A stretch of DNA of 62,777 nt, counting the filler, from Choristocarpus tenellus KU-1152 (Eukaryota > Protista > Phaeophyceae): assembly GCA_964200185.2 (NCBI GenBank). It is 8 parts of 8 records of this genome, joined end to end, with 100 filler letters (N's around TTAATTAATTAA, not from the genome) between each part and the next. Parts side by side here need not be neighbours in the genome. Positions count along the whole stretch, not along the records: positions 17,463 to 28,060 come from CAXNAD020002842.1; 7 more parts are not named here. One strand, given 5' to 3'. This document shows, piece by piece, positions 17,463-28,060 of this stretch. The notes under the pieces are model-generated. The model worked only from the letters and a program-made list of their open reading frames with translations, ran no database searches and was not told where the DNA came from. A program made the position numbers and the translations under genes. Position 1 is the stretch's first letter; each line of letters opens with the position of its first letter.

Positions 17463-17866
17463 CCGGGGTCGAGCGATGTAGATGTGTCCTGCACCTCCGT
17501 GGAGCCCATCCCGGCCATGGCGATGTTCTCTGACTGTAGATGAGGCGCAGTAGCTGCTGGGACCATAAACTCGTGAAAAAGAAGACAGAAGGTTAGCGGA
17601 GGAGGCAGCCATGGTACGACTGATCAACATACAGACCATAGTACATATGGATTATGTTTCGAGTTTAGTATTACAATTAAAATTCTCTAACAGTTGGCTT
17701 ACCTGTAAGACTAAAAATAATGAATAAGCAACAGAAGAAACCCCATAAAGGTTACTCTTCTAATTTCAACCATGTAATCATGTTCAGCAATAGAGAACCG
17801 TGTAAGGCTTCACCTTCCTGTTTTCACCACTGATAAATAGCATTACCTCCCAAGATAAATTATACA
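17463..17866. mobile_element. Copia fragments: family A RT piece (17463-17533, minus), family B pol piece and partial family B LTR (~17640-17866, plus)
   Basis: 17463-17533 is the reverse complement of ~22045-22113. RRLAEEAAMVRLINIQT resembles RRSVEEAAKVQLVNVRT at ~27310. 17640-17866 is the reverse complement of LTR B at 20136 and 25836. Confidence 0.8.
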
Positions 17867-17869
17867 GGA

Positions 17870-19115
17870 TCACCTGTTTAGTTGACTACTCAACAATCCC
17901 ATTGCTCTGTGGCGTACGTGGGGGGTTCTTGCGTCATTTTACGCCCCGCTCCCAAACACCTGTTTCCCTATCGGTATCCCTGCACCTATGTGTGTGGAGC
18001 TCCATAGCCCTCTAGCTCCTAGTTGTTTGCCCCGTGACCTCCGTGGTCAGGTACAAAGAGGACGAGATGATGACTGTCTTGAGGTGATAGTATGTGAGGT
18101 CCGGTGCTGTGGACAGCTACGTGAACATCTGTCGCATGCTGTCCCTCATGCCTATGATCGGAGTCCTTTTCGTGGCGCGTTTCTTCTAGCCGCCTCCAGC
18201 TGCTCGTACTCTGTCCAGACGTGATCGAGACGGATAACGAAGTCGGCAGCGTCCTCCACCGACGAGCAGTACATGTCACGCAGCTTCATACCTATGAGCT
18301 GCATGAGCCGCTGCACTGCAGCGCACTGCGCCTATAACAAACCCATGAATATTACTCTTGCTTCTGCTGGTATTAGAATTAGCACCACTACCAACATTTG
18401 CCTTATCTGTTTCTTTGCCAATAAAGCCTTTTATCCATGTTCCATAATTCATATCATCATCACCAGAAGCAACACCGCCATAAAAACTATTTGCTCTATT
18501 TAGACTCTAGATACATTCAGGATATTTCTGATTAATTGCCTGTTTTGGCTTTTAAACTTTTCTGCTGTCGTCTCTACTCTTGGCTTTAATGCATTTACAT
18601 CAATTAAATCTTCTCCCTCATACCGCAGATAAAAGTGAGAACTGCGTATAGCTCCAGCATCACCCCCGCAAGTCTGCTCCAACTCAAGCCAGGCTGCCCT
18701 CCTGTCGGGGCTGCCGTTATTTTCGTGGGTGCTGACCACCATCGCTGTGGCCCCCTCGTGCGTGGCCTGACCCAGCAGGAACCACAAGGCCTCGCGATGG
18801 TTGATGTACTCCTCGTACATGCTGCGTTCCCCAAAGGATGTATCAGCCGTAGGAGGTGCCGGGATGTGGTATGCAGGTTGGAGGATGCGGTACAGTCCCT
18901 TACCGCCCGCATAGCTCACCAGCACCATCTGCCATTCATTCTCCCCACTTCTCTCTTGTACGCCCAAGCGCGCCAGTCCATAGTGGCAGCTTACGTGGGT
19001 CCACTTCCATACCTGTAAGGCGCATAACAAGAGCTTTTCGAATATAGAGTTTTTTTATTTATGTGGTATGAATGAATTTATTGGTGGAGTGAGCACCATC
19101 CCTCGAGGTGAGGGG
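17870..19115 (-). mobile_element. Ty1/copia family A: partial LTR, PBS and degenerate gag interrupted by foreign DNA
   Basis: LTR 3' part 19029-19115, PBS GTTATGCGCC, ATG at 19010, gag WQMVLVSYAGGKGLYRIL...SPDRRAAWLELEQ. Homologous to 19601-20135 and 23763-24399. Confidence 0.85.
18326..18506 (-). pseudogene. Bacterial (Rickettsiaceae-like) Sca/OmpA-family autotransporter fragment
   Basis: Minus-strand frame not in the ORF track: LNRANSFYGGVASGDDDMNYGTWIKGFIGKETDKANVGSGANSNTSRSKSNIHGFVIGA. Fits the recalled rickettsial autotransporter linker/beta-domain start (NR...GV[AS][AS]GD....G.W...F.G......K....G..IG.D). AT-rich with A/T-ending codons; absent from the other two gag copies. Confidence 0.75.
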
Positions 19116-20135
19116 TGTGCAATATAGGCTGGGTAGTCTATAGGTTCTTAGGTATTTGGTAACCAGTATTATGTAACAAATTGTTGACTGAGTGGATCAA
19201 TTGTCAATCACTTTCCATACGCTTAGAGTAGTAGGTTCGAATCTTGATGGCTTGATTTCTTATTGCTGCTTAAGGTAAATGGCTGACACAGGACGACTGA
19301 CAGAGAACGACTGACGTATTGCGACTGACATAGACATATTGCGACTGATACAGATACGTTCAGACGTGTCTGCTGACGTGCGCAATAGATAACGAGGTAG
19401 AGCACTCCCTACCTCGAGGGATGGTGCTCTCTCCGCTAATTAATTCATCCATACCACCACATCAAGCAAAAATTATATTCGAACTCTCTTTGCACAGATT
19501 ATGAGCCTCACAGGTATTAATTCATCCATACATACATCATAAAGCAAAAACTATATTCGAACAGCTCTTGTTGCACAGATTACGAGCATCACTCACAGGT
19601 ATGGAAGTGGACCTACGTAAGCTGCCACTATAAAACGGCGCGTGTGGCATACAAGGGAGAAGTGAGGAGATTGGTAGATGGTGCTGGTGAGCTATGCGGG
19701 CGGTAAGGGACTGTGCTGCAACCTCCGACCAGCATACCACATCGCGGCACCCCCTACGGCTGATGCATCCTTTGGGGAACGCAGCGCGTACGAGGAGTAC
19801 ATGAAGCATCGCTTGTGGTTCCTGCTGGGCCAGGCTACGAGGGGGGCTGCAACGATGGTGGTCAGCACCCACGAAAATAACGGCAGCCCCGACGGGATGG
19901 CAGCCTGGCTCTTGTTGGAGCATATCTATGAGGGGCGCGCTGCACTGCAGCGACCCATGCAGCTCATAGGTCTCGAGATGAAGCTGCACGACATGTACTG
20001 CTTGTGGGTGGAGGATGCTGCTGACTTCGTCATCCGTCTCGATCACGTCTGGACAGAGTACGAGCAGCTGGAGGCGGTCAAGGAGGACCACGCCAAGAAG
20101 GGGGGCTCTGATCATCGACATTAGGGACAGCATGC

Positions 20136-21295
20136 TGTGCAATTTACCTTGGGAGGTAATGCTATTTATCAGTAGAGAAGACAAGAAGATGTGGAGCCTT
20201 ACACGGTTCCCCATTGCTGAACGTGATTACATGATTGAAATTAGAAGAGTGACCTTTGTGGGGTGTCTTCTCATTGTTTATTATTATTTATGCTTCCTAC
20301 CTAAGTCAACGGCTATGTCAAAGTAGTTGAATACGGAATAAATACCCGTACATAATCCCATACATAATCCGGATGTAATATCTCATTAGTTACATCACAT
20401 GCACTCAATTCAACACAATAATCTCATATACACAAAATGAGGTACACCTCACTATTGTCCTATTTTGCACACTTCCCCATGAGAGCGCAGGCAAGAAAGA
20501 TATTTGCTGGAACTCTCAAACCTAGAACATCTTATTGTGCACAGTCCCCATTCTGCACACTCCCCCATGAGAGTTGAAGTAAAAGATGTCAGATTGATTC
20601 AACTCTCACACTCATCACATTTATCTTATCAACGCAGTAAAAGAACACTGATGGCTTGAACTCGAACATACGTCATTCATCTAGTCAACACATTGTCTAC
20701 GAAGTCTTGTACCTGCTTATTTAGATGCACCAACATAGTGATGTACAATCGTGTCCAATGATTATCCCTAACTTAGTGTATGAGTAAAATCTGAACCAGT
20801 CCCCTTTTGCTGTTTCTCTGGCGTATCACTCAGTCCCACAGGCTTGATTGAAGCCTATCATAATTGAATGTTTCGTACATCCTCTCGTTGAGTGAAGTCC
20901 TTTGCCACCAATCTGGTCTTGAACTCTTCAATGGTCCCCTCAGCTGTTGGTTTTGTCTTAAAATCAGACTTGGATTTGTTCCCCATGTCAAAACCTCTCT
21001 CTACGGATGTTCCTTTCATCCATTGTTGTTCCATCTTCTCCATTGCCGCTTGCCATTATCGTGTATCAGGCCCCGTGAGTGCCTCTGATATAGAAGCTGG
21101 TTCTTGATGGTCTGGAGTAGATATTATTTACTTCCCAGACGTGTAAGTCTTGTGCAGGTAGCCCTTTACTGACAACCTTCCTCGCCAGTGTGCCTCTGAT
21201 ATAGAAGATGATTCTTGATTATCTGGAGTAGATATTTTTTACTCCTCAGACTTAAAACCTCTTGTGCAGGCAGCCCTTTGCTGACAACCTTCCTC
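20136..21295 (-). mobile_element. Ty1/copia family B internally deleted copy nested in family A
   Basis: LTR 20136-20471 (TGTGCA..TGCACA) with adjacent PPT (reverse complement of CTTCCCCATG), RNaseH end, and RT start KTRLVAKDFTQRED. Homologous to 25836-26770. Confidence 0.85.
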
Positions 21296-22017
21296 ACTTG
21301 TGTGCCGTCCACAACAAAGGAGGCCCTGAGGGGGCCCAGATGCCGAGCAGTGGCAGGAGGAGGCCATCGAGAAGGAAATGGCAGGGCTATGGCAGAAGGA
21401 GACGTTTGACAACGAGGCCCTGCCCATAGGGAGGAAGGCGATCAAGATGCGATTCGTCTTCAAATCAAGCGCTCCGGGGGCAGGACGGTGGAACGCTGTA
21501 AGACACAACTCATATCCCGCTACTTCACCCAAAAAGCAGGGGTGGATTTCTTCAAAACATTTATCCCAGTGGTTGGCTACGACACAATACGGAGCGCCAT
21601 GTCCGTCGCAACGTACAAAGGCTGGAACATTGACGCCCTGGACTTCACACAGGCCAACCTCAATGCAGATCTATAGGAGGACGTCTGGCTGGACCTTCCA
21701 GACGGCCAAACCTTCAAGGCAGAGGAGATCATCTATGGACTGAAGCAGTTAGCCATGGAGTGGTATCACAAGCTACACGGCACCATCCTAGCAGAAGGGT
21801 GGACGAGCAGCCAACATAATGAATGCACCTACTTCAGGAAGAGTGAAGACGGACGCATCGCCATCCTCACCACCAACGTGGAAGACACTGCCACCACCAG
21901 GGACTTCACGGAGAAGATCCAGAGGATGAGGGCATCGCTACTGGAGAAGTAGGAGGGGAGGGACCTAGGCACGCTGGACAAGTTGATTGGGATGGGCATC
22001 ACTGTGGGTGTTAACGG

Positions 22018-23200
22018 CATCACCCTGCGACCAACCTCTACTCTCAGAGAACATCGCCATGGCCGGGATGGGCTCCACGGAGGTGCAGGACACATCTACA
22101 TCGCTCGACCCCGGCATGGACCTCTCTGCCAGGCACGACAACGAGAAGGAACTGAATCCCACCATCTATCTACCCCTATGCCAGCATCATTGGCCAACTC
22201 ATGTTTCTAGCAGGCATGACTCGCCCGGACCTGGCCAACAGCGTTCGCGGACTGGGGAGCAGGGCGGCGTCTCCATGCATGCGGCACTGACGTGGACTGC
22301 AACATGTTCTGCGCTACATAGCAGGGACACTGGACGTCTGCATTTACTATGGTGGGGGGACTGGTGATATTGAAAGAGGGGACGAAGAGCTCTTGGTGGG
22401 GAATGGGGATTCCGACTGGGGCATCGACTCCTAAACACGCAGGAGTGTCACGGGTTATCTATTATTGTTGAACGGATTGCCTGGCGCTCCAAGCTTCAAG
22501 GCGCCGACACCCTCTCCAGCTCCGAGGCAGAGTGGACGGCAATGGCATACGGCATGCGCTACAGCATTTTCCTTCGAGGCATTCTGGGGGAGATCGGCAC
22601 ACTACATCACCCTGGACCAACATCTACTCTCAGAGAACATCGTCATGGCCGGGATGGGCTCCATGGAGGTGCAGGACACATCTATATGACTCGACCCCGG
22701 CATGGACCTCTCTGCCAGGCACGACAACGAGAAGGAACTGAATCCCACCATCTACCCCTACGCCAGCATCATTGGCCAACTCATGTTTCTAGCAGGCATA
22801 ACTCGCCCGGACCTGGCCAACAGCGTTCGCGAACTGGGGAGCAGGGCGGCGTCTCCATGCATGCGGCACTGACGTGGACTGCAACGCGTTCTACGCTACA
22901 TAGCAGGGACACTGGACGTCTGCATTTACTATGCCATAGTCGGGGAACTGGCGATATGGACAGAGGGAATAGGGAGCTCTTGGTGGGGAATGGGGATTCC
23001 GACTGGGGCACCGAAAGTCAAATGTGCAGGAGGCGTCACGGGCTACCTGCTTCTTTTCAACGGATCGCTGATCACCTGGCGCTCCAAGCTTCAAGGTGCC
23101 GTAACCCTCTCCAGCTCCGAGGCAGAGTAGACGGCAATCGCATACGGCATGCGCCATTGCATCTTCCTTTGAGTCATTCTGGGGGAGATCAGCGCACTGC
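22018..23200 (+). repeat. ~585-bp tandem duplication of the copia RT-end/RNaseH segment
   Basis: CATCACCCTG..CTACTCTCAGAGAACATCG.. starts at ~22018 and again at ~22605 and runs through ATTCTGGGGGAGATC. Confidence 0.9.
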
Positions 23201-23762
23201 AGGAACAGACTCCCTGTTTGTGTGGCAAACGTGGTGCTATCGAGGCGGGCGGTCAGCATCACAAGCTTAAATGGGAGAACGAAGCACGTGGACATGAATG
23301 AAGCTGAAGTGCATCAGAGAATACATGGATCAGGGTCTGTTCCACGTACGGTATGTTCCTACATTAAAACCGCTGGCCGACATTTTGACCAAGTCTTTGC
23401 TCAAGAACTTCTGATTTTGTGCATTCTGTGCTTTTTCATCGGGGGTGAGCTTTGTCAGCAACTTTGCCACACGCTCATGGGGGAGTGTGCCATATAGGCT
23501 GTTAGTATGTAGGTAGGAGTCGAGAGATGGGTTCGAGTCTCTTTGGGCTCGTTCGTTTCTTTTTGGTTTGCTACAAGTGGTTAATGCAACTACTACGACT
23601 GACGCAGAACCTCTGACACAGACATGTTCTGACATGTCTGCTGACGTGCGCAGTAGATAATGAGGCTGGGCGCACCCCCTTCGAGGTATGGTGGTCACTC
23701 CGCTAATTTATTCATTCATACCACATAAAGCAAAACTACAGTTTGAACAGCTCTTTAAAACA

Positions 23763-24749
23763 TGACCTCCATGATCATGTACGAAGGGTAAGACATGATG
23801 ACTGTCTTGAGGTGATCGTAGGTGAGGTCCGGTGCTGTGGATAACTGGGTGAACACCTGTAGCATGCTGTCCCTGATTCTTATGATCAGAGCCCCCTCTT
23901 GGCATGGTCGTCCTTAGCCACCTCCAGCTGCTCGTACTCCGTCCAGACATGATGACGGATGACGAAGTCGGCAGCGTACTCCAACGATGAGCAGTACATG
24001 TCCCGCAGCTTCACCTCGAGAGCTATGAGCAGCATGCGCCGCTGCACTGTAGCGTGCCCCCCGTAGATTTGTTCCAACTCGAGCCAGGCTGCCCTCCCGT
24101 CGGGGTTCCCATTGTTCTCGTGGGTGCTTACCACCATTCCTGCGGCCCCCCCTTGTGGCCTGGCCCAGCAGGAACCACAAGGCCTTACAATGCTCGATGT
24201 ACTCATCGTACGCGCTGCGTTCCCCAAACGATGTATCAGCCATAGGAGATGAGTGGATGTGGTACGCCGATTGGAGGATGCGGTACAGTTCCTTCCCGCC
24301 CGCATAAGTCAGAATCGCCATCTTCCATTTTGCCCACTTCTTCCCTGTACGCCCTCGCGCGACAGTACATAGTGGCAACTTACGTGGGTTCACTTCCATA
24401 CCTGTGAGGCTCGTAACCTGTGCAAAAGAGCCTTTTCGAACTAGAGTTTTTGCTTGATATGGTATAGATGAATGAATTAGCGGAGTGACCACCATCCCTC
24501 GAGGTGAGGGGGTGCCCTGCCTCGTTACCTACTACGCACGTCAACAGAACATATCAGAACATGTCTGCGTCAGTCGCACGGCGCCAGTCATTCTGTGTCA
24601 GTGGTTCTGCATCAGTGGTTTTGTGTCAGTTGTTACGCACCAGTTGTAGTTGCGTCAGCTACTTGTAGCAATCCAAGAAGAAACTAATAAGTCCATCGAG
24701 ACTCGAGTCCATGACTCCTAACTTACTCACTACCACCTTATATTGCACA
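23763..24749 (-). mobile_element. Ty1/copia family A: LTR (24419-24749), PBS and gag
   Basis: Minus strand TGTGCA...TGCACA LTR, then GGTTACGAGCC, then ATG at 24399: MEVNPRKLPL...WAKWKMAILTYAGGKELYRIL. Confidence 0.88.
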
Positions 24750-25305
24750 TATATATACCACCCAATATCTCTTTTTAACTCGAACTATGTCTAGAGCATT
24801 TGGTCTCTTGCCCATATTCTTTATGAACATGCGTTCCCCCATCATCTACTTGGCAAAGTCCGTGAAGGGCACTGAACTGTGTTAATTTGAGACCTTAAGG
24901 TTTCGTACACAATTCCCATCATCCACTGTTGCTTCTTGATTCTTCAAGCAGAGATTATTCAGAACCCAAATGGTCAATCCTCAAACCGAGCTCTCAACTA
25001 CTGGGCACCAATGTGCAGCCACTACAACTACCCTAGAGATGAAGAGATAACCATAGAATGCCAGGATTCTGGTCCGTCCAACGCACCAATGAGCGTGAAT
25101 AAGATGTATGGTTGAGCTTACACTTCGCTACCATCCACCCTGTTGTGAACTCCTAAATTCCCAGATATGATACCTCTCTGTACAGGATCTATCATATATC
25201 TGGCGAACGACTGATCAACGACAAAATCCTACGCAGTCCTGATTTGAATTTCCACATACCCAAGGAAGAATCTGTTGTTTCGTTAGTTAGAAGTGATCTC
25301 TGTGC

Positions 25306-25565
25306 AACGAATGGCTTTATCTAATTTACTTGCAAGTAATATATGGTCTTCCTCATTACAAGAGATCGCGCTGACCAACTTATCGTCATTGTCCATTCTG
25401 ATATCAATTTTTCCATTTAATTGAATTTTATTTCAAATCAGATAAATCATTTCGACGAATATTTCCTTTTGCCGTAGCAAAAATAATATGCATATTATCC
25501 CATTCATCATGATTCTCAGGCATAGGCATTACATTTGTCATAGTCTTCCGATCATGCAATGGAAG
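25306..25565 (-). pseudogene. gyrA: Bacterial (Rickettsiaceae-like) DNA gyrase subunit A C-terminal fragment, frameshifted
   Basis: Minus strand: LPLHDRKTMTNVMPMPENHDEWDNMHIIFATAKGNIRRNDLSDLK-(+1 nt at ~25430)-KIQLNGKIDIRMDNDDKLVSAISCNEEDHILLASKLDKAIR. Collinear with the recalled Rickettsia GyrA beta-pinwheel region (PENQDEWD..FATAKGNIRRSDLLDFKKIQSNGKIAIRLDEDDKL..HILLATKAGKALRF). No introns, AT-rich. Confidence 0.88.
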
Positions 25566-25835
25566 ACAAAAAGAGCTGTTTGAATAGAGTTAATTAGTGG
25601 AGTGAGCACCATTCTTCGAGGTAAGGGGGGTGCTTTGCCTCGTTATCTATTGCGTACGTCAGCAGACACGTCAGAACGTGTCTGCATCAGTCGCACCTAC
25701 GTCACTCGTTCTGCATCAGTCGTACCACGTCACTCGTTCTGCGTGACTAGTACTGCGTTACTCGTCCGAAGTCAGTCATCAAGTAAAAAAAAAAAACTGT
25801 AGAGATTCGATCATATGAATTTGGGCGTACCTAAG
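25566..25835 (-). mobile_element. Copia family A LTR (degenerate, solo-like)
   Basis: AAAGAGCTGTTTGAATAGAGT..AGTGGAGTGAGCACCATTCTTCGAGGT.. matches the LTR at 24419-24749 in the same orientation. Confidence 0.8.
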
Positions 25836-28060
25836 TGTGCAATTTAACTTGGGAGGTAATGCTATTTATCAGTAGTGAAGATAAGAATGTGTGAAGCCTC
25901 ACACGGTTCCCCATTGCTGAAAGTGATTAAATGGTTGAAATTAAAAGAGTAACCTTTGTGGGGTGTTCTCTCACTGTTTTATTAATATTTGTGCTTCCTA
26001 CCGAAGTCAACGGTTGTGTCAAAGTAGTTGAATGCAGAATAATAACCTATCCGTAATCCCATTCATAATAATCCAGATGTACTATCTTATTAGCTACATC
26101 TCTCATACACAGAGTAAGGTACACCTCAATATTGTCCTATTTTGCACACTCCCCCATGAGAGCGCAGGCAATGAAGGGTTGCTGGAACTCTCAAACCTAA
26201 AGAGTGGTAAGAAACAAAAAAATGGTTCAACTCTAACACACATCACAATTATCCTGTCAATGCAGTAAAAGAACACTGATTGCTTGAACTCGAACATACG
26301 AAGTCTTTTACCTGCTTGTTTAGATGCACCAATACAGTGGTATACAATCGTGTCCAATGATGATCCCTCACTTAAGAGTATGGGTAAAATTTTGAACAAG
26401 CCCCCTTTTTCTGCTTCTCTTGTTGGATATCATAATGAATGTTTTGTACATCCTCTCATTAAATGAAGTCCTGTGCCACTAATCTGGTCTTGAACTCCTT
26501 AATGGTTCCCTCAGTGTGTTGGCTTTGTCTTAAATTCAGAATTGGATTTCTTCCCCATATCAAAGCCTCTCCTCCCTCTATGAATGTTCCTTTCATCCAT
26601 TGATACTCCATCTTCTCCATTGCCGCTTGCCATTCTCGCGTGTCAGGCCCTGTCAGTGCCTCTGATATAGAAGACGGTTCTTGATGGTCTGAAGTAGATA
26701 CATATTATTTACTTCCCAGACTTACAAGTCTTGTGCAGGCAGCCCTTTGCTGACAACCTTCCTCGCCAGGGTGCCTGTGATATATTGCATGCTTCATTTC
26801 ATGTACCATTGCTGTCCATTTCGCTTCTGATGAAGATGTGGTTATAGCTCCTTGCATCTTGGATTTCCATGCAATTGGTGCCTCATTTAATAGGATTAGG
26901 TATCCCGTCATGCTTCGTCTTGAAACAGTGTCATTGCCCCAGTCATAGTCTCCATACCCGACCAGGCCCCCCCATTGTTCATTTCACCACGAGCAGGATA
27001 GTGCATCCCTACTTTCATGGTGCCTAATAGGTATCGTAGAACATGTTGCAGCCCTTTGCTGACAACCTTCCACTGTTTTTCTTTTCTGGCTCCAACCCTA
27101 GTCCAGCTAATTCCTCCGCCTATTTAGACGGTGTCGCTCTCCTCTGGCGACAAACGATCTGAAGTTCTCCTTTACCTCCAGAATTGGAGCATATTCCTTT
27201 GAAAGAACAAGGACCAATATGCTTGATCAGTCCAGAGTTTAAAGATCTTCTGTTGGCCCTGATCTCGTCTCTGGTAGGGGATCCTGTTGTAATATGGTCC
27301 GTACGTTGACCAGTTGTACCTTGGCCGCCTCCTCCACTGACCTTCTGTGTTCTCTTTCATGATATATGGTCCCAGCGGCTAGAGTGCTCCCAGGCTCCCC
27401 GTGGTTAGCTCCTCCTTTCCCTTCTGATGGAGGCTTAGTTACTGCTCCTGCTAATGTCCTGCTCCCAGCAATTGCTTTTCTCATTCCATAAGCAAGAAAG
27501 AATCTTGGGGTGTCCACTCCAATCCATGGGCATGCCCCCTCAGGGACAAGTGTTGTGACGACTGCTCCAGGTCCATAGGCAGATTATTGAGCCTCAGGCT
27601 CAGGCTCAGGGTTGCAGCTCCGGCTGCTGTATTGCCTCGATAATCTCCCCCATCTATTCACAGGGTCCCCGTGCTCAATATTCGGCATTGCGTACCAGGT
27701 ACCCAAACTAACCCCCAACCTCCAGTTCTTGCTTGTTATCGATCGTATCGTATTCCATGTCTCCTTAGCCTCCAGCTTCCCATAACCCCCTCGTCATTTT
27801 AGAAGAAGGAACCATAACACCTTGTTCTTCTTTGTGTGTGGGCATGTGCCGTACGCACTTCCTCTCCCTAGATGAGATGGTGGTGGTGGGTGTTTCAGGA
27901 ATCTCTTAGTCCCTCGTTGTAATCTCGTACAAACCCTTTCTACCAGCGTAGGCGATCAATGACAGTCTCTAGGTTGACCAGGTCTCCAATGACCTCCCTG
28001 TGGCCCCCCCCCCGCCCCGACACAGATCGGCAGACCACACGGCCGAACTCCCGTCACCCC
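25836..28060 (-). mobile_element. Ty1/copia family B, deleted/rearranged (gag, pol linker, RNaseH, RT start, PPT, 3' LTR)
   Basis: LTR 25836-26148, PPT, RNaseH SMTGYLILLNEAPIAWKSKMQGAITTSSSEAKW (26705-26911), gag WSTxRLSLIAYAGRKGLYEI (~27920-27985). Confidence 0.85.

What the first reader, a model, noticed from the sequence alone, without database searches (positions are those of the whole stretch)
18326..18506. Rickettsial Sca/OmpA-type autotransporter fragment inserted cleanly in copia gag
Comparison with gag copies at 19601-20135 and 23763-24399 shows a ~337-bp AT-rich insert (18326-18662) between ..TGCGGGGG and TGCGCTGCAGTGCAG.., with almost no gag loss. Its distal half encodes NRANSFYGGVASGDDDMNYGTWIKGFIG..SKSNIHGFVIGA, the linker/beta-barrel start typical of Rickettsiaceae surface cell antigens. 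It points to the same donor lineage as the gyrA fragment 7 kb away. Sca genes encode abundant surface proteins, which is compatible with an RNA template (inference).
Basis: partly seen in the sequence, partly recalled or inferred. Interest (0 to 1): 0.82.

Follow-up and report, generated by a model that had tools for sequence, protein, structure and literature searches.

The report
Rickettsial gene scrap in host repeat
A 336-base dead piece of a secreted-protease (autotransporter) gene from a Rickettsia-family bacterium sits cleanly inside a repeated element of a eukaryotic genome; it is a small fossil of an intracellular bacterium, of a kind already known from other hosts.

Summary
One of three copies of a GC-rich repeat carries a 336-nt AT-rich insert (window 18327-18662, minus strand). 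No target bases are lost, there is no target duplication, and there is no poly(A).

The whole insert, not only the distal half, is one contiguous stretch of a bacterial gene. It aligns end to end at 88-89% nucleotide identity to genes in two Rickettsiaceae-type MAG contigs. All 18 relatives found in prokaryotic genomes are Rickettsiaceae/Rickettsiales MAGs or Candidatus Megaira.

The gene family is about 525-566 aa: a RickCE-like CE-clan protease domain plus an autotransporter barrel. It lies between the SLT and TraD genes of an F-type conjugation cluster. The insert covers the post-catalytic linker and the first ~35 residues of the barrel. A 22-nt deletion that shifts the frame disables it.

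It is therefore autotransporter-derived and rickettsial, but RickCE/Sca15-like rather than rOmpA-like.

The best explanation is bacterial DNA captured at a chromosome break by end joining. This is inferred from the junctions. The RNA-template idea has no support.

The "copia gag" label could not be confirmed, although copia RT remnants lie nearby. A gyrA fragment 7 kb away is real, but its donor was not determined.

This is a known kind of event and of modest interest.

The parts
18327..18662 (-). Whole insert: a 336-nt contiguous fragment of a Rickettsiaceae RickCE-type autotransporter gene. It corresponds to about aa 209-334 of the 566-aa L006 protein, or aa 205-320 of P0002.
   Evidence: Absent from copies B and C. 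Aligns over bases 1-336 to L006 6528-6906 (88.8% of ungapped columns) and over 1-335 to L012 2072-2437 (88.0%). Groups with L006+L012 at 97/92 support.
18503..18661 (-). Proximal half (53 codons): the region just after the CE-clan catalytic domain, i.e. the linker. By chance it is in frame with the upstream part of the repeat and ends at TAA 18500-18502.
   Evidence: BLASTP to P0002 205-257, E 4e-17. tblastn gives 87% identity to L006 and 85% to L012. No Pfam or NCBIfam hit on its own.
18327..18503 (-). Distal half (59 codons, in another frame): end of the linker plus the first strands of the autotransporter beta-barrel.
   Evidence: phmmer hits P0001 at E 5e-26 and P0002 at 1.9e-8. BLASTP to P0002 262-320, E 1e-17. 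In L006 the Pfam Autotransporter domain starts at aa 300 and the fragment reaches about aa 334. Weak NCBIfam rOmpA hit at model positions 1832-1880 of 2126, E 0.01.
18495..18512 (-). Disabling lesion. Relative to L012, L006 and L002, 22 nt are missing, which shifts the frame. A further 9 nt are missing in a short AATAG-type repeat tract.
   Evidence: DNA alignment A3 and the translations.
18019..18326 (-). Target repeat, copy A, the part downstream of the insert on the minus strand.
   Evidence: Aligns to copies B and C.
18663..19030 (-). Target repeat, copy A, the part upstream of the insert on the minus strand.
   Evidence: Aligns to copies B and C.
19601..20135 (+). Copy B of the repeat. 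It is the inverted partner of copy A and has the empty site.
   Evidence: (inverted pairs I2, I4, I8 at 90-93%).
23763..24399 (-). Copy C of the repeat. It is the direct-repeat partner of copy A (spacing about 5.4 kb) and has the empty site.
   Evidence: (D2, D7, D10, D14).
25286..25559 (-). Second AT-rich bacterial-type fragment: the C-terminal beta-propeller region of GyrA, in two frames with stops.
   Evidence: TIGR01063 gyrA E 0.016 for 25431-25559. PF03989 E 2.6e-4 and PDB GyrA C-terminal domains (1suu E 1.2e-4, 1zi0 E 9.6e-4) for 25286-25432. It lies in a stretch, 24750-25577, that is unique within the piece.
21488..21673 (+). Decayed Ty1/copia-type reverse transcriptase. This is the only retroelement domain confirmed in the piece.
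   Evidence: Pfam RVT_2 E 1.9e-9, 38 bits, above the 31.6-bit gathering score.

Best explanation
A short piece of DNA from an intracellular Rickettsiaceae bacterium (Megaira-like or a close relative) was captured in the host nucleus when a double-strand break in one copy of a GC-rich repeat was sealed by end joining. The piece came from the bacterium's conjugative element, out of a gene for a RickCE-type CE-clan protease exported by its own autotransporter barrel. It lacks the signal peptide, the catalytic domain and nearly all of the barrel, and it carries a frameshifting deletion, so it does nothing now. It is a molecular fossil of the association.

Shown: the insertion, its exact borders, its gene of origin, the donor family and its broken state.

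Inferred: the break-repair mechanism, and that transfer was as DNA from a bacterium living in the cell.
For: - Empty sites: copies B and C lack the insert.
- Junctions: no target loss, no duplication, at most 1 nt shared, no poly(A), no terminal repeats.
- One source gene: end-to-end collinearity with a single bacterial gene.
- Donor: 88-89% DNA identity to L006 and L012, and a clade with them at 97/92 support. All 18 relatives in 185,579 species genomes are Rickettsiaceae/Rickettsiales MAGs or Ca. Megaira.
- Family architecture: RickCE_cat plus Autotransporter, sitting between SLT and TraD of F-type tra clusters. The CE domain matches PDB RickCE 5HAM at E 4.9e-14.
- Decay: a 22-nt frameshifting deletion and a stop.
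- Company: a second AT-rich bacterial fragment (gyrA) lies 7 kb away.
- Precedent: mosaic Rickettsiaceae fragments lie among host repeats in the Volvox carteri nuclear genome (PMC4324946).
Against: - No reads or PCR were available to confirm the junctions.
- The host is unknown, so neither a resident bacterium nor other copies of the repeat could be examined.
- End joining is inferred from junction anatomy only.
- The nearest donors are MAGs of uncertain genus, and the gene sits on a mobile element, so its tree is not a species tree.
Confidence: 0.85

Rival explanations
1. Secondary copy. The 336 nt were not taken from the bacterium directly. They were copied or cut from a larger, older integrant of rickettsial DNA elsewhere in the same nuclear genome and used as filler at the break.
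For: The fragment is already degenerate. Bacterial fragments cluster here, with gyrA 7 kb away. Mosaic, rearranged integrants are the rule in Volvox (PMC4324946). About 8% of sites are window-specific changes relative to the L006/L012 ancestor, with codon positions 10:3:13, so the changes are not purely third-position.
Against: No larger integrant was seen in the 10.6-kb piece. Proteins from the tra-region loci match nowhere else in it. The host genome could not be searched.
Confidence: 0.15
2. RNA-templated origin. During reverse transcription of the retroelement, reverse transcriptase switched to an abundant bacterial mRNA and back, and the chimeric cDNA then integrated.
For: Copia-type RT remnants lie nearby. 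The target may be a gag-like sequence, although that rests on reading by eye only.
Against: The target sequence resumes at exactly the next base, which two template switches would rarely give. There is no poly(A) and no useful microhomology at the junctions. The two nearest copies lack the insert. The bacterial mRNA would have had to meet a retroelement particle. The 'gag' identity is itself unconfirmed.
Confidence: 0.04
3. Artefact: a chimeric read or a misassembly joined symbiont or contaminant DNA to host DNA.
For: The window comes from an assembly that I cannot inspect. One related scaffold, L002, does look like a possible chimera.
Against: Two junctions 336 nt apart restore the target to the base. 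The fragment has a 22-nt deletion and is only 88-89% identical to any bacterial gene found, unlike a live contaminant.
Confidence: 0.03

Closest known systems
Rickettsiaceae (Megaira-clade) gene fragments in the nuclear genome of Volvox carteri (Kawafune et al. 2015, PMC4324946)
   Same: The fragments are short and truncated (16S 412 bp, murB 768 bp, ftsQ 75 bp), come from an AT-rich Rickettsiaceae endosymbiont lineage, and are interspersed with host multicopy and transposon sequences.
   Different: The genes differ: those are chromosomal housekeeping genes, whereas this is a conjugative-element gene plus gyrA. The host here is unknown. Here one fragment sits precisely inside a repeat copy whose empty-site paralogues lie alongside.
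Nuclear Wolbachia transfers in arthropods and nematodes (e.g. PMC4299567; general knowledge)
   Same: DNA of a Rickettsiales endosymbiont is integrated into host chromosomes, often in repeat- and retrotransposon-rich regions, and is usually non-functional.
   Different: The donor family differs (Rickettsiaceae, not Anaplasmataceae). The size here is a few hundred bases rather than kilobases to whole genomes.
NUMT/NUPT-type capture of organelle DNA at double-strand breaks by non-homologous end joining (established knowledge, not tested here)
   Same: Foreign DNA is used as filler, with blunt or 0-few-nt microhomology junctions, no target-site duplication and little or no target loss.
   Different: The donor is a bacterium, not an organelle.
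RickCE of Rickettsia bellii (PDB 5HAM; Pruneda et al. 2016, PMC4961225) and CE-protease Sca15 autotransporters (Gillespie et al. 2018, PMC6133264)
   Same: The full-length relatives of the insert carry a RickCE-like CE-clan catalytic domain (PF22179; 5HAM E 4.9e-14) followed by an autotransporter barrel. The paper describes this combination for Sca15.
   Different: The window holds only the linker and barrel start and no catalytic residues. Orthology to Sca15 or RickCE proper was not tested. These relatives are ~550 aa and lie inside tra clusters.
rOmpA (Sca0) / rOmpB-type rickettsial surface antigens
   Same: They share the generic motif at the start of the autotransporter barrel, seen as a weak local NCBIfam rOmpA match, E 0.01.
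   Different: The score is 12.8 bits against a 2600-bit cut-off. The passenger domain, size and genomic context are all different.

Membership tests
Nuclear integrant of endosymbiont DNA (bacterium-to-eukaryote DNA transfer) | Bacterial sequence flanked on both sides by host sequence in one contiguous molecule, with an empty-site allele or paralogue | tested here: met
   The insert lies inside repeat copy A, and copies B and C have the uninterrupted site. A copia-type RT is nearby.
Nuclear integrant of endosymbiont DNA (bacterium-to-eukaryote DNA transfer) | Phylogenetic nesting of the fragment inside a bacterial clade | tested here: met
   Clade with L006+L012 at 97/92 support. All 18 genome hits are Rickettsiaceae, Rickettsiales or Megaira.
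Nuclear integrant of endosymbiont DNA (bacterium-to-eukaryote DNA transfer) | Junctions verified by spanning reads or PCR | not testable with these tools
   No reads and no host genome were available.
RickCE-type CE-protease autotransporter (PF22179 + PF03797) | Homology along its length to family members | tested here: met
   Both halves match P0002 at 205-257 and 262-320, E about 1e-17 each. The DNA is collinear with L006 and L012.
RickCE-type CE-protease autotransporter (PF22179 + PF03797) | CE-clan catalytic domain (His/Asp/Cys) present | tested here: not met
   The fragment starts about 20 residues after the RickCE_cat match ends in L006 (104-189). No catalytic region lies in the window.
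RickCE-type CE-protease autotransporter (PF22179 + PF03797) | Complete C-terminal beta-barrel and intact reading frame | tested here: not met
   Only about 35 of about 250 barrel residues are present. Pfam gives no hit on the fragment. There is a frameshift and a stop.
Rickettsia rOmpA / Sca0 | NCBIfam NF052635 equivalog score above the cut-off | tested here: not met
   12.8 bits against 2600, a local match to the barrel start only.
Rickettsia Sca15 | CE-clan passenger plus autotransporter architecture in the source gene | tested here: met
   The architecture is seen in relatives. The description of Sca15 comes from PMC6133264.
Rickettsia Sca15 | Orthology to Rickettsia Sca15 genes | not tested
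   No Rickettsia Sca15 sequence was retrieved. The genome scan returned Megaira and MAG loci only.
Ty1/copia gag (target of the insertion) | Match to a gag family (e.g. the Pfam UBN2/Retrotran_gag models) or to known gag proteins | tested here: not met
   No Pfam family even at E 10. No PDB match. No homologue of 81-259 aa. The AF2 model has pLDDT 41.6 and is unusable. The third-position excess among copy differences is only weak.
Ty1/copia gag (target of the insertion) | Position upstream of protease-integrase-RT in one element | tested here: inconclusive
   An RVT_2 fragment lies on the same strand 1.3 kb after copy B, but it is separated by another decayed element and no protease or integrase is present.
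Retro-copy (RNA-templated insertion) | Poly(A) tail, target-site duplication, or template-switch microhomologies | tested here: not met
   None is present at either junction.

The most novel reading that the evidence does not exclude
The fragment comes from inside an F-type conjugation (tra) cluster. An unrelated pseudogenised copy of the same gene family (metagenome scaffold L002) switches to GC-rich foreign sequence within 1-2 nt of the same point. The most novel reading not excluded is that DNA of the rickettsial conjugative element reaches the host nucleus preferentially, by type IV secretion as with Agrobacterium T-DNA, and breaks or joins at preferred sites. Integrants would then be biased towards element genes, rather than being random debris of lysed bacteria.
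Probability: 0.05. Interest if true: 0.7.

Novelty: new member of a known kind. Interest (0 to 1): 0.3.

Why it matters
The insert is a dated-by-decay marker that the host lineage has, or once had, a Rickettsiaceae (Megaira-like) intracellular bacterium carrying a conjugative element. With the gyrA fragment nearby, it flags this repeat-rich region as a sink for bacterial DNA.

The empty-site paralogues give unusually clean junctions for studying how foreign DNA is captured.

It has no functional consequence for the host that can be seen here, and events of this kind are well documented elsewhere.

Tried and rejected
- Pfam on the two insert halves and on the gyrA piece: nothing, because the pieces are too short.
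- NCBIfam: only weak rOmpA and gyrA hits.
- tblastn against plasmids: only a weak Megaira plasmid autotransporter hit for the distal half, and noise for the proximal half.
- Rfam on the whole piece: nothing.
- Exact degenerate 30-mer from the insert in JGI metagenomes: no match.
- Protein-guided metagenome scan: three AT-rich bacterial contigs, at 72-73% gapped identity, no closer than L012 or L006.
- 'Gag' identity of the target: Pfam at E 0.01 and at E 10, PDB, the word-indexed homologue search and a single-sequence AlphaFold model (pLDDT 41.6, so no fold search was run) all failed.
- Search of the piece with all ORFs of the fetched tra-region loci: no further bacterial fragment.
- Literature look-ups of the MAG names and accessions: nothing.
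- Common descent of the window's insert and L002 was considered, because they share an end point. It was rejected on the tree and on identities.
- The two halves of the insert were always searched apart. In the tree script they occupy one alignment row with gap columns at the break, and no real letters were placed there.

Full report
**The observation**

The piece (17463-28060) is a nest of diverged repeats. A GC-rich unit occurs three times:
- copy A, 18019-19030, minus strand;
- copy B, 19601-20135, plus strand;
- copy C, 23763-24399, minus strand.

Aligning them shows that copy A alone carries 336 extra bases, window 18327-18662. Read on the minus strand, the repeat stops after a run of five G, the insert follows, and the repeat resumes at the next base. 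Nothing is lost and nothing is duplicated. At most one G is shared between donor and target at the distal junction. The insert is about 37% GC inside 55-66% GC flanks, and it is unique within the piece. I do not take the contig for human.

**What the insert is**

On the minus strand it reads in two frames. Codons from 18661 to 18503 end in TAA. I searched the two pieces apart and never joined them with real letters.

Pfam finds nothing in either piece, because they are too short. NCBIfam gives only a 12.8-bit local match to the barrel start of rOmpA.

The exhaustive search of the distal 59 residues against 1.84 billion representatives gave six hits. The best is P0001, 86% identical, E 5e-26. 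The others are proteins of 306-684 aa.

P0001 and P0002 also contain the proximal half immediately upstream. BLASTP places the two halves at P0002 205-257 and 262-320, each at about E 1e-17. At DNA level the entire insert aligns collinearly to two bacterial genes:
- bases 1-336 to L006 6528-6906 (MAG g1_MAG_00004), 88.8% of ungapped columns;
- bases 1-335 to L012 2072-2437 (Rickettsiaceae MAG SGMAG-38), 88.0% of ungapped columns.

So the insert is one contiguous stretch of one gene. It differs from these genes by a 22-nt deletion, which causes the frame change and the stop, and by a 9-nt deletion in a short repeat tract.

**The gene family and the donor**

The full-length relatives are 525-566 aa. 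They combine RickCE_cat (PF22179, with weak Peptidase_C48) and Autotransporter (PF03797). Their protease domain matches the crystal structure of Rickettsia bellii RickCE (5HAM, E 4.9e-14), Orientia OtDUB and Xanthomonas XopD.

In L003, L004 and L006 the gene lies between an SLT transglycosylase gene and the TraD-type coupling-protein gene. TraU, TraN, TraF, TraH and TraG lie upstream in the larger loci, and a MobA/relaxase gene lies beyond in L003. This is an F-type conjugative cluster of the kind carried by rickettsial integrative elements and plasmids. That last identification rests on my knowledge of those elements. A related autotransporter sits next to traL and traB on the Megaira plasmid of Mesostigma viride.

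A scan of one genome per prokaryotic species found 18 loci. All are Rickettsiaceae or Rickettsiales MAGs, or Candidatus Megaira venefica, polyxenophila or sp..

A maximum-likelihood tree of the 116 shared columns puts the window with L006 and L012 (97/92). The metagenome scaffold L002 sits just outside (92/58).

In L006 the insert corresponds to about aa 209-334. RickCE_cat ends at 189 and the Pfam barrel starts at 300. The fragment is therefore the linker after the protease plus roughly the first 35 barrel residues. It has no signal peptide, no catalytic residues and no functional barrel.

"Rickettsial autotransporter, linker and barrel start" is right. "OmpA-type" is not. Gillespie et al. 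2018 (PMC6133264) describe CE-clan protease domains inside Rickettsia Sca15 autotransporters, so "Sca" is defensible only as Sca15-like architecture. I did not test orthology.

The proximal half is bacterial too.

**The target**

I could not confirm that the repeat is copia gag:
- no Pfam family, even at E 10;
- no PDB match;
- no homologue within the length window of the word search, which says nothing about long polyproteins;
- a single-sequence AlphaFold model that was too poor to use (pLDDT 41.6);
- only a weak excess of third-position differences among the copies.

By eye the translation has a gag-like, all-helical look. A genuine Ty1/copia RT remnant (RVT_2, E 1.9e-9) lies at 21488-21673. 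The label is plausible but unproven.

Copies A and B are arms of a large inverted repeat (about 17715-20289). Copy A and copy C belong to a direct repeat with a 5.4-5.7 kb period. Both partners have the empty site, so the insertion postdates those duplications.

**Mechanism**

The junction anatomy is as follows: exact restoration of the target, no target-site duplication, at most 1 nt of shared sequence, no poly(A), no terminal repeats, and both ends internal to an ORF. This is what capture of filler DNA at a double-strand break by non-homologous end joining gives, as is established for organelle DNA insertions. That comparison is general knowledge and was not tested here.

It fits an RNA-templated route poorly. 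That route needs two template switches returning to the very next base, or a poly(A)-primed copy.

It is also not what a chimeric read would give. There are two junctions 336 nt apart, and the insert is degenerate, only 88-89% identical to any bacterial gene found.

I cannot exclude that the piece was copied from a larger, older integrant elsewhere in the host genome. The window-specific changes (26 of about 330 sites, codon positions 10:3:13) suggest a mix of change in the bacterial lineage and neutral decay.

**The neighbouring gyrA fragment**

On the minus strand, 25559-25286 reads as the C-terminal beta-propeller of GyrA in two frames. The evidence is TIGR01063 at E 0.016, PF03989 at E 2.6e-4, and GyrA C-terminal-domain structures at E 1e-4 to 1e-3. 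It is AT-rich and lies in a stretch unique within the piece. It is real, but its donor lineage could not be tested with the available collections and caps. "Same donor" remains an inference.

**An unexplained coincidence**

Scaffold L002 (1124 bp) carries 915 bp of a related gene with a single in-frame stop, then switches abruptly to 52-59% GC sequence of unknown identity. Its homology to the bacterial genes ends 1-2 nt beyond the point where the window's insert ends.

Common descent is excluded by the tree and by identities: 80% for window against L002, versus 88-89% for window against L006 and L012.

The shared end point is a GGCGC island. It is one of only two to four runs of five or more G/C in these 35-36% GC genes. 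Such an island may favour joining to GC-rich DNA. Alternatively, L002 may be an assembly chimera.

**Verdict**

This is a genuine, well-delimited, dead fragment of a Rickettsiaceae conjugative-element gene in a eukaryotic repeat. Events of this kind are known: Wolbachia integrants (PMC4299567) and Rickettsiaceae fragments in Volvox (PMC4324946). It is a new member of a known kind and of modest interest. It is useful mainly as a marker of a past or present symbiont and as a clean example of junction anatomy.

Noticed in passing
window 25286-25559 (-): An AT-rich fragment of a bacterial gyrA (C-terminal beta-propeller), in two frames with stops. It lies in an 828-nt stretch that is unique within the piece, next to a repeat terminus at about 25578. 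Donor lineage not determined.
   Followed up: partly
L002 1-1124 (ENA ERZ23500112, scaffold_15969): A pseudogenised RickCE-autotransporter (one TAA at 408) that switches to 52-59% GC unknown sequence 1-2 nt beyond the position where the window's insert ends. The shared point is a rare GGCGC island in an AT-rich gene. Common descent is excluded; a chimera or a joining hotspot is not resolved.
   Followed up: partly
L003 8993-14775; L004 7875-12595; L006 4758-11332: In Rickettsiaceae MAG contigs the RickCE-autotransporter gene holds a conserved position between the SLT transglycosylase and TraD coupling-protein genes of an F-type tra cluster. It therefore looks like a fixed passenger of the conjugative element.
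   Followed up: partly
L004 8885-10552 (= L010): In one Rickettsiaceae MAG the same gene is split into a 338-aa protease ORF and a 183-aa barrel ORF. The stop lies about 18 codons downstream of the position that matches the window insert's end.
   Followed up: no
window 17715-20289: A large imperfect inverted repeat. Arms A (with the insert) and B are about 82-93% alike and surround a central stretch of about 290 nt, 19117-19403. The inner ends, 19037-19117 and 19403-19483, look like terminal inverted repeats that recur at 23681-23735, 24448-24502 and 25578-25633.
   Followed up: partly
window 22018-23201: A tandem duplication of about 586-595 nt (88-97% identity) inside a decayed GC-rich copia-type pol region.
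   Followed up: no
window 20136-21203 and 25836-26784: Two copies (about 76-90% identical) of a more AT-rich decayed copia-like element. Read by eye on the minus strand, it shows RT and RNase H motifs. It differs from the GC-rich pol at 21300-23300.
   Followed up: no
window 18500-19030 (-): A 176-codon chimeric ORF (TTG start) runs from the repeat into the proximal half of the bacterial insert, because the two happen to be in frame. There is no evidence that it is expressed.
   Followed up: no
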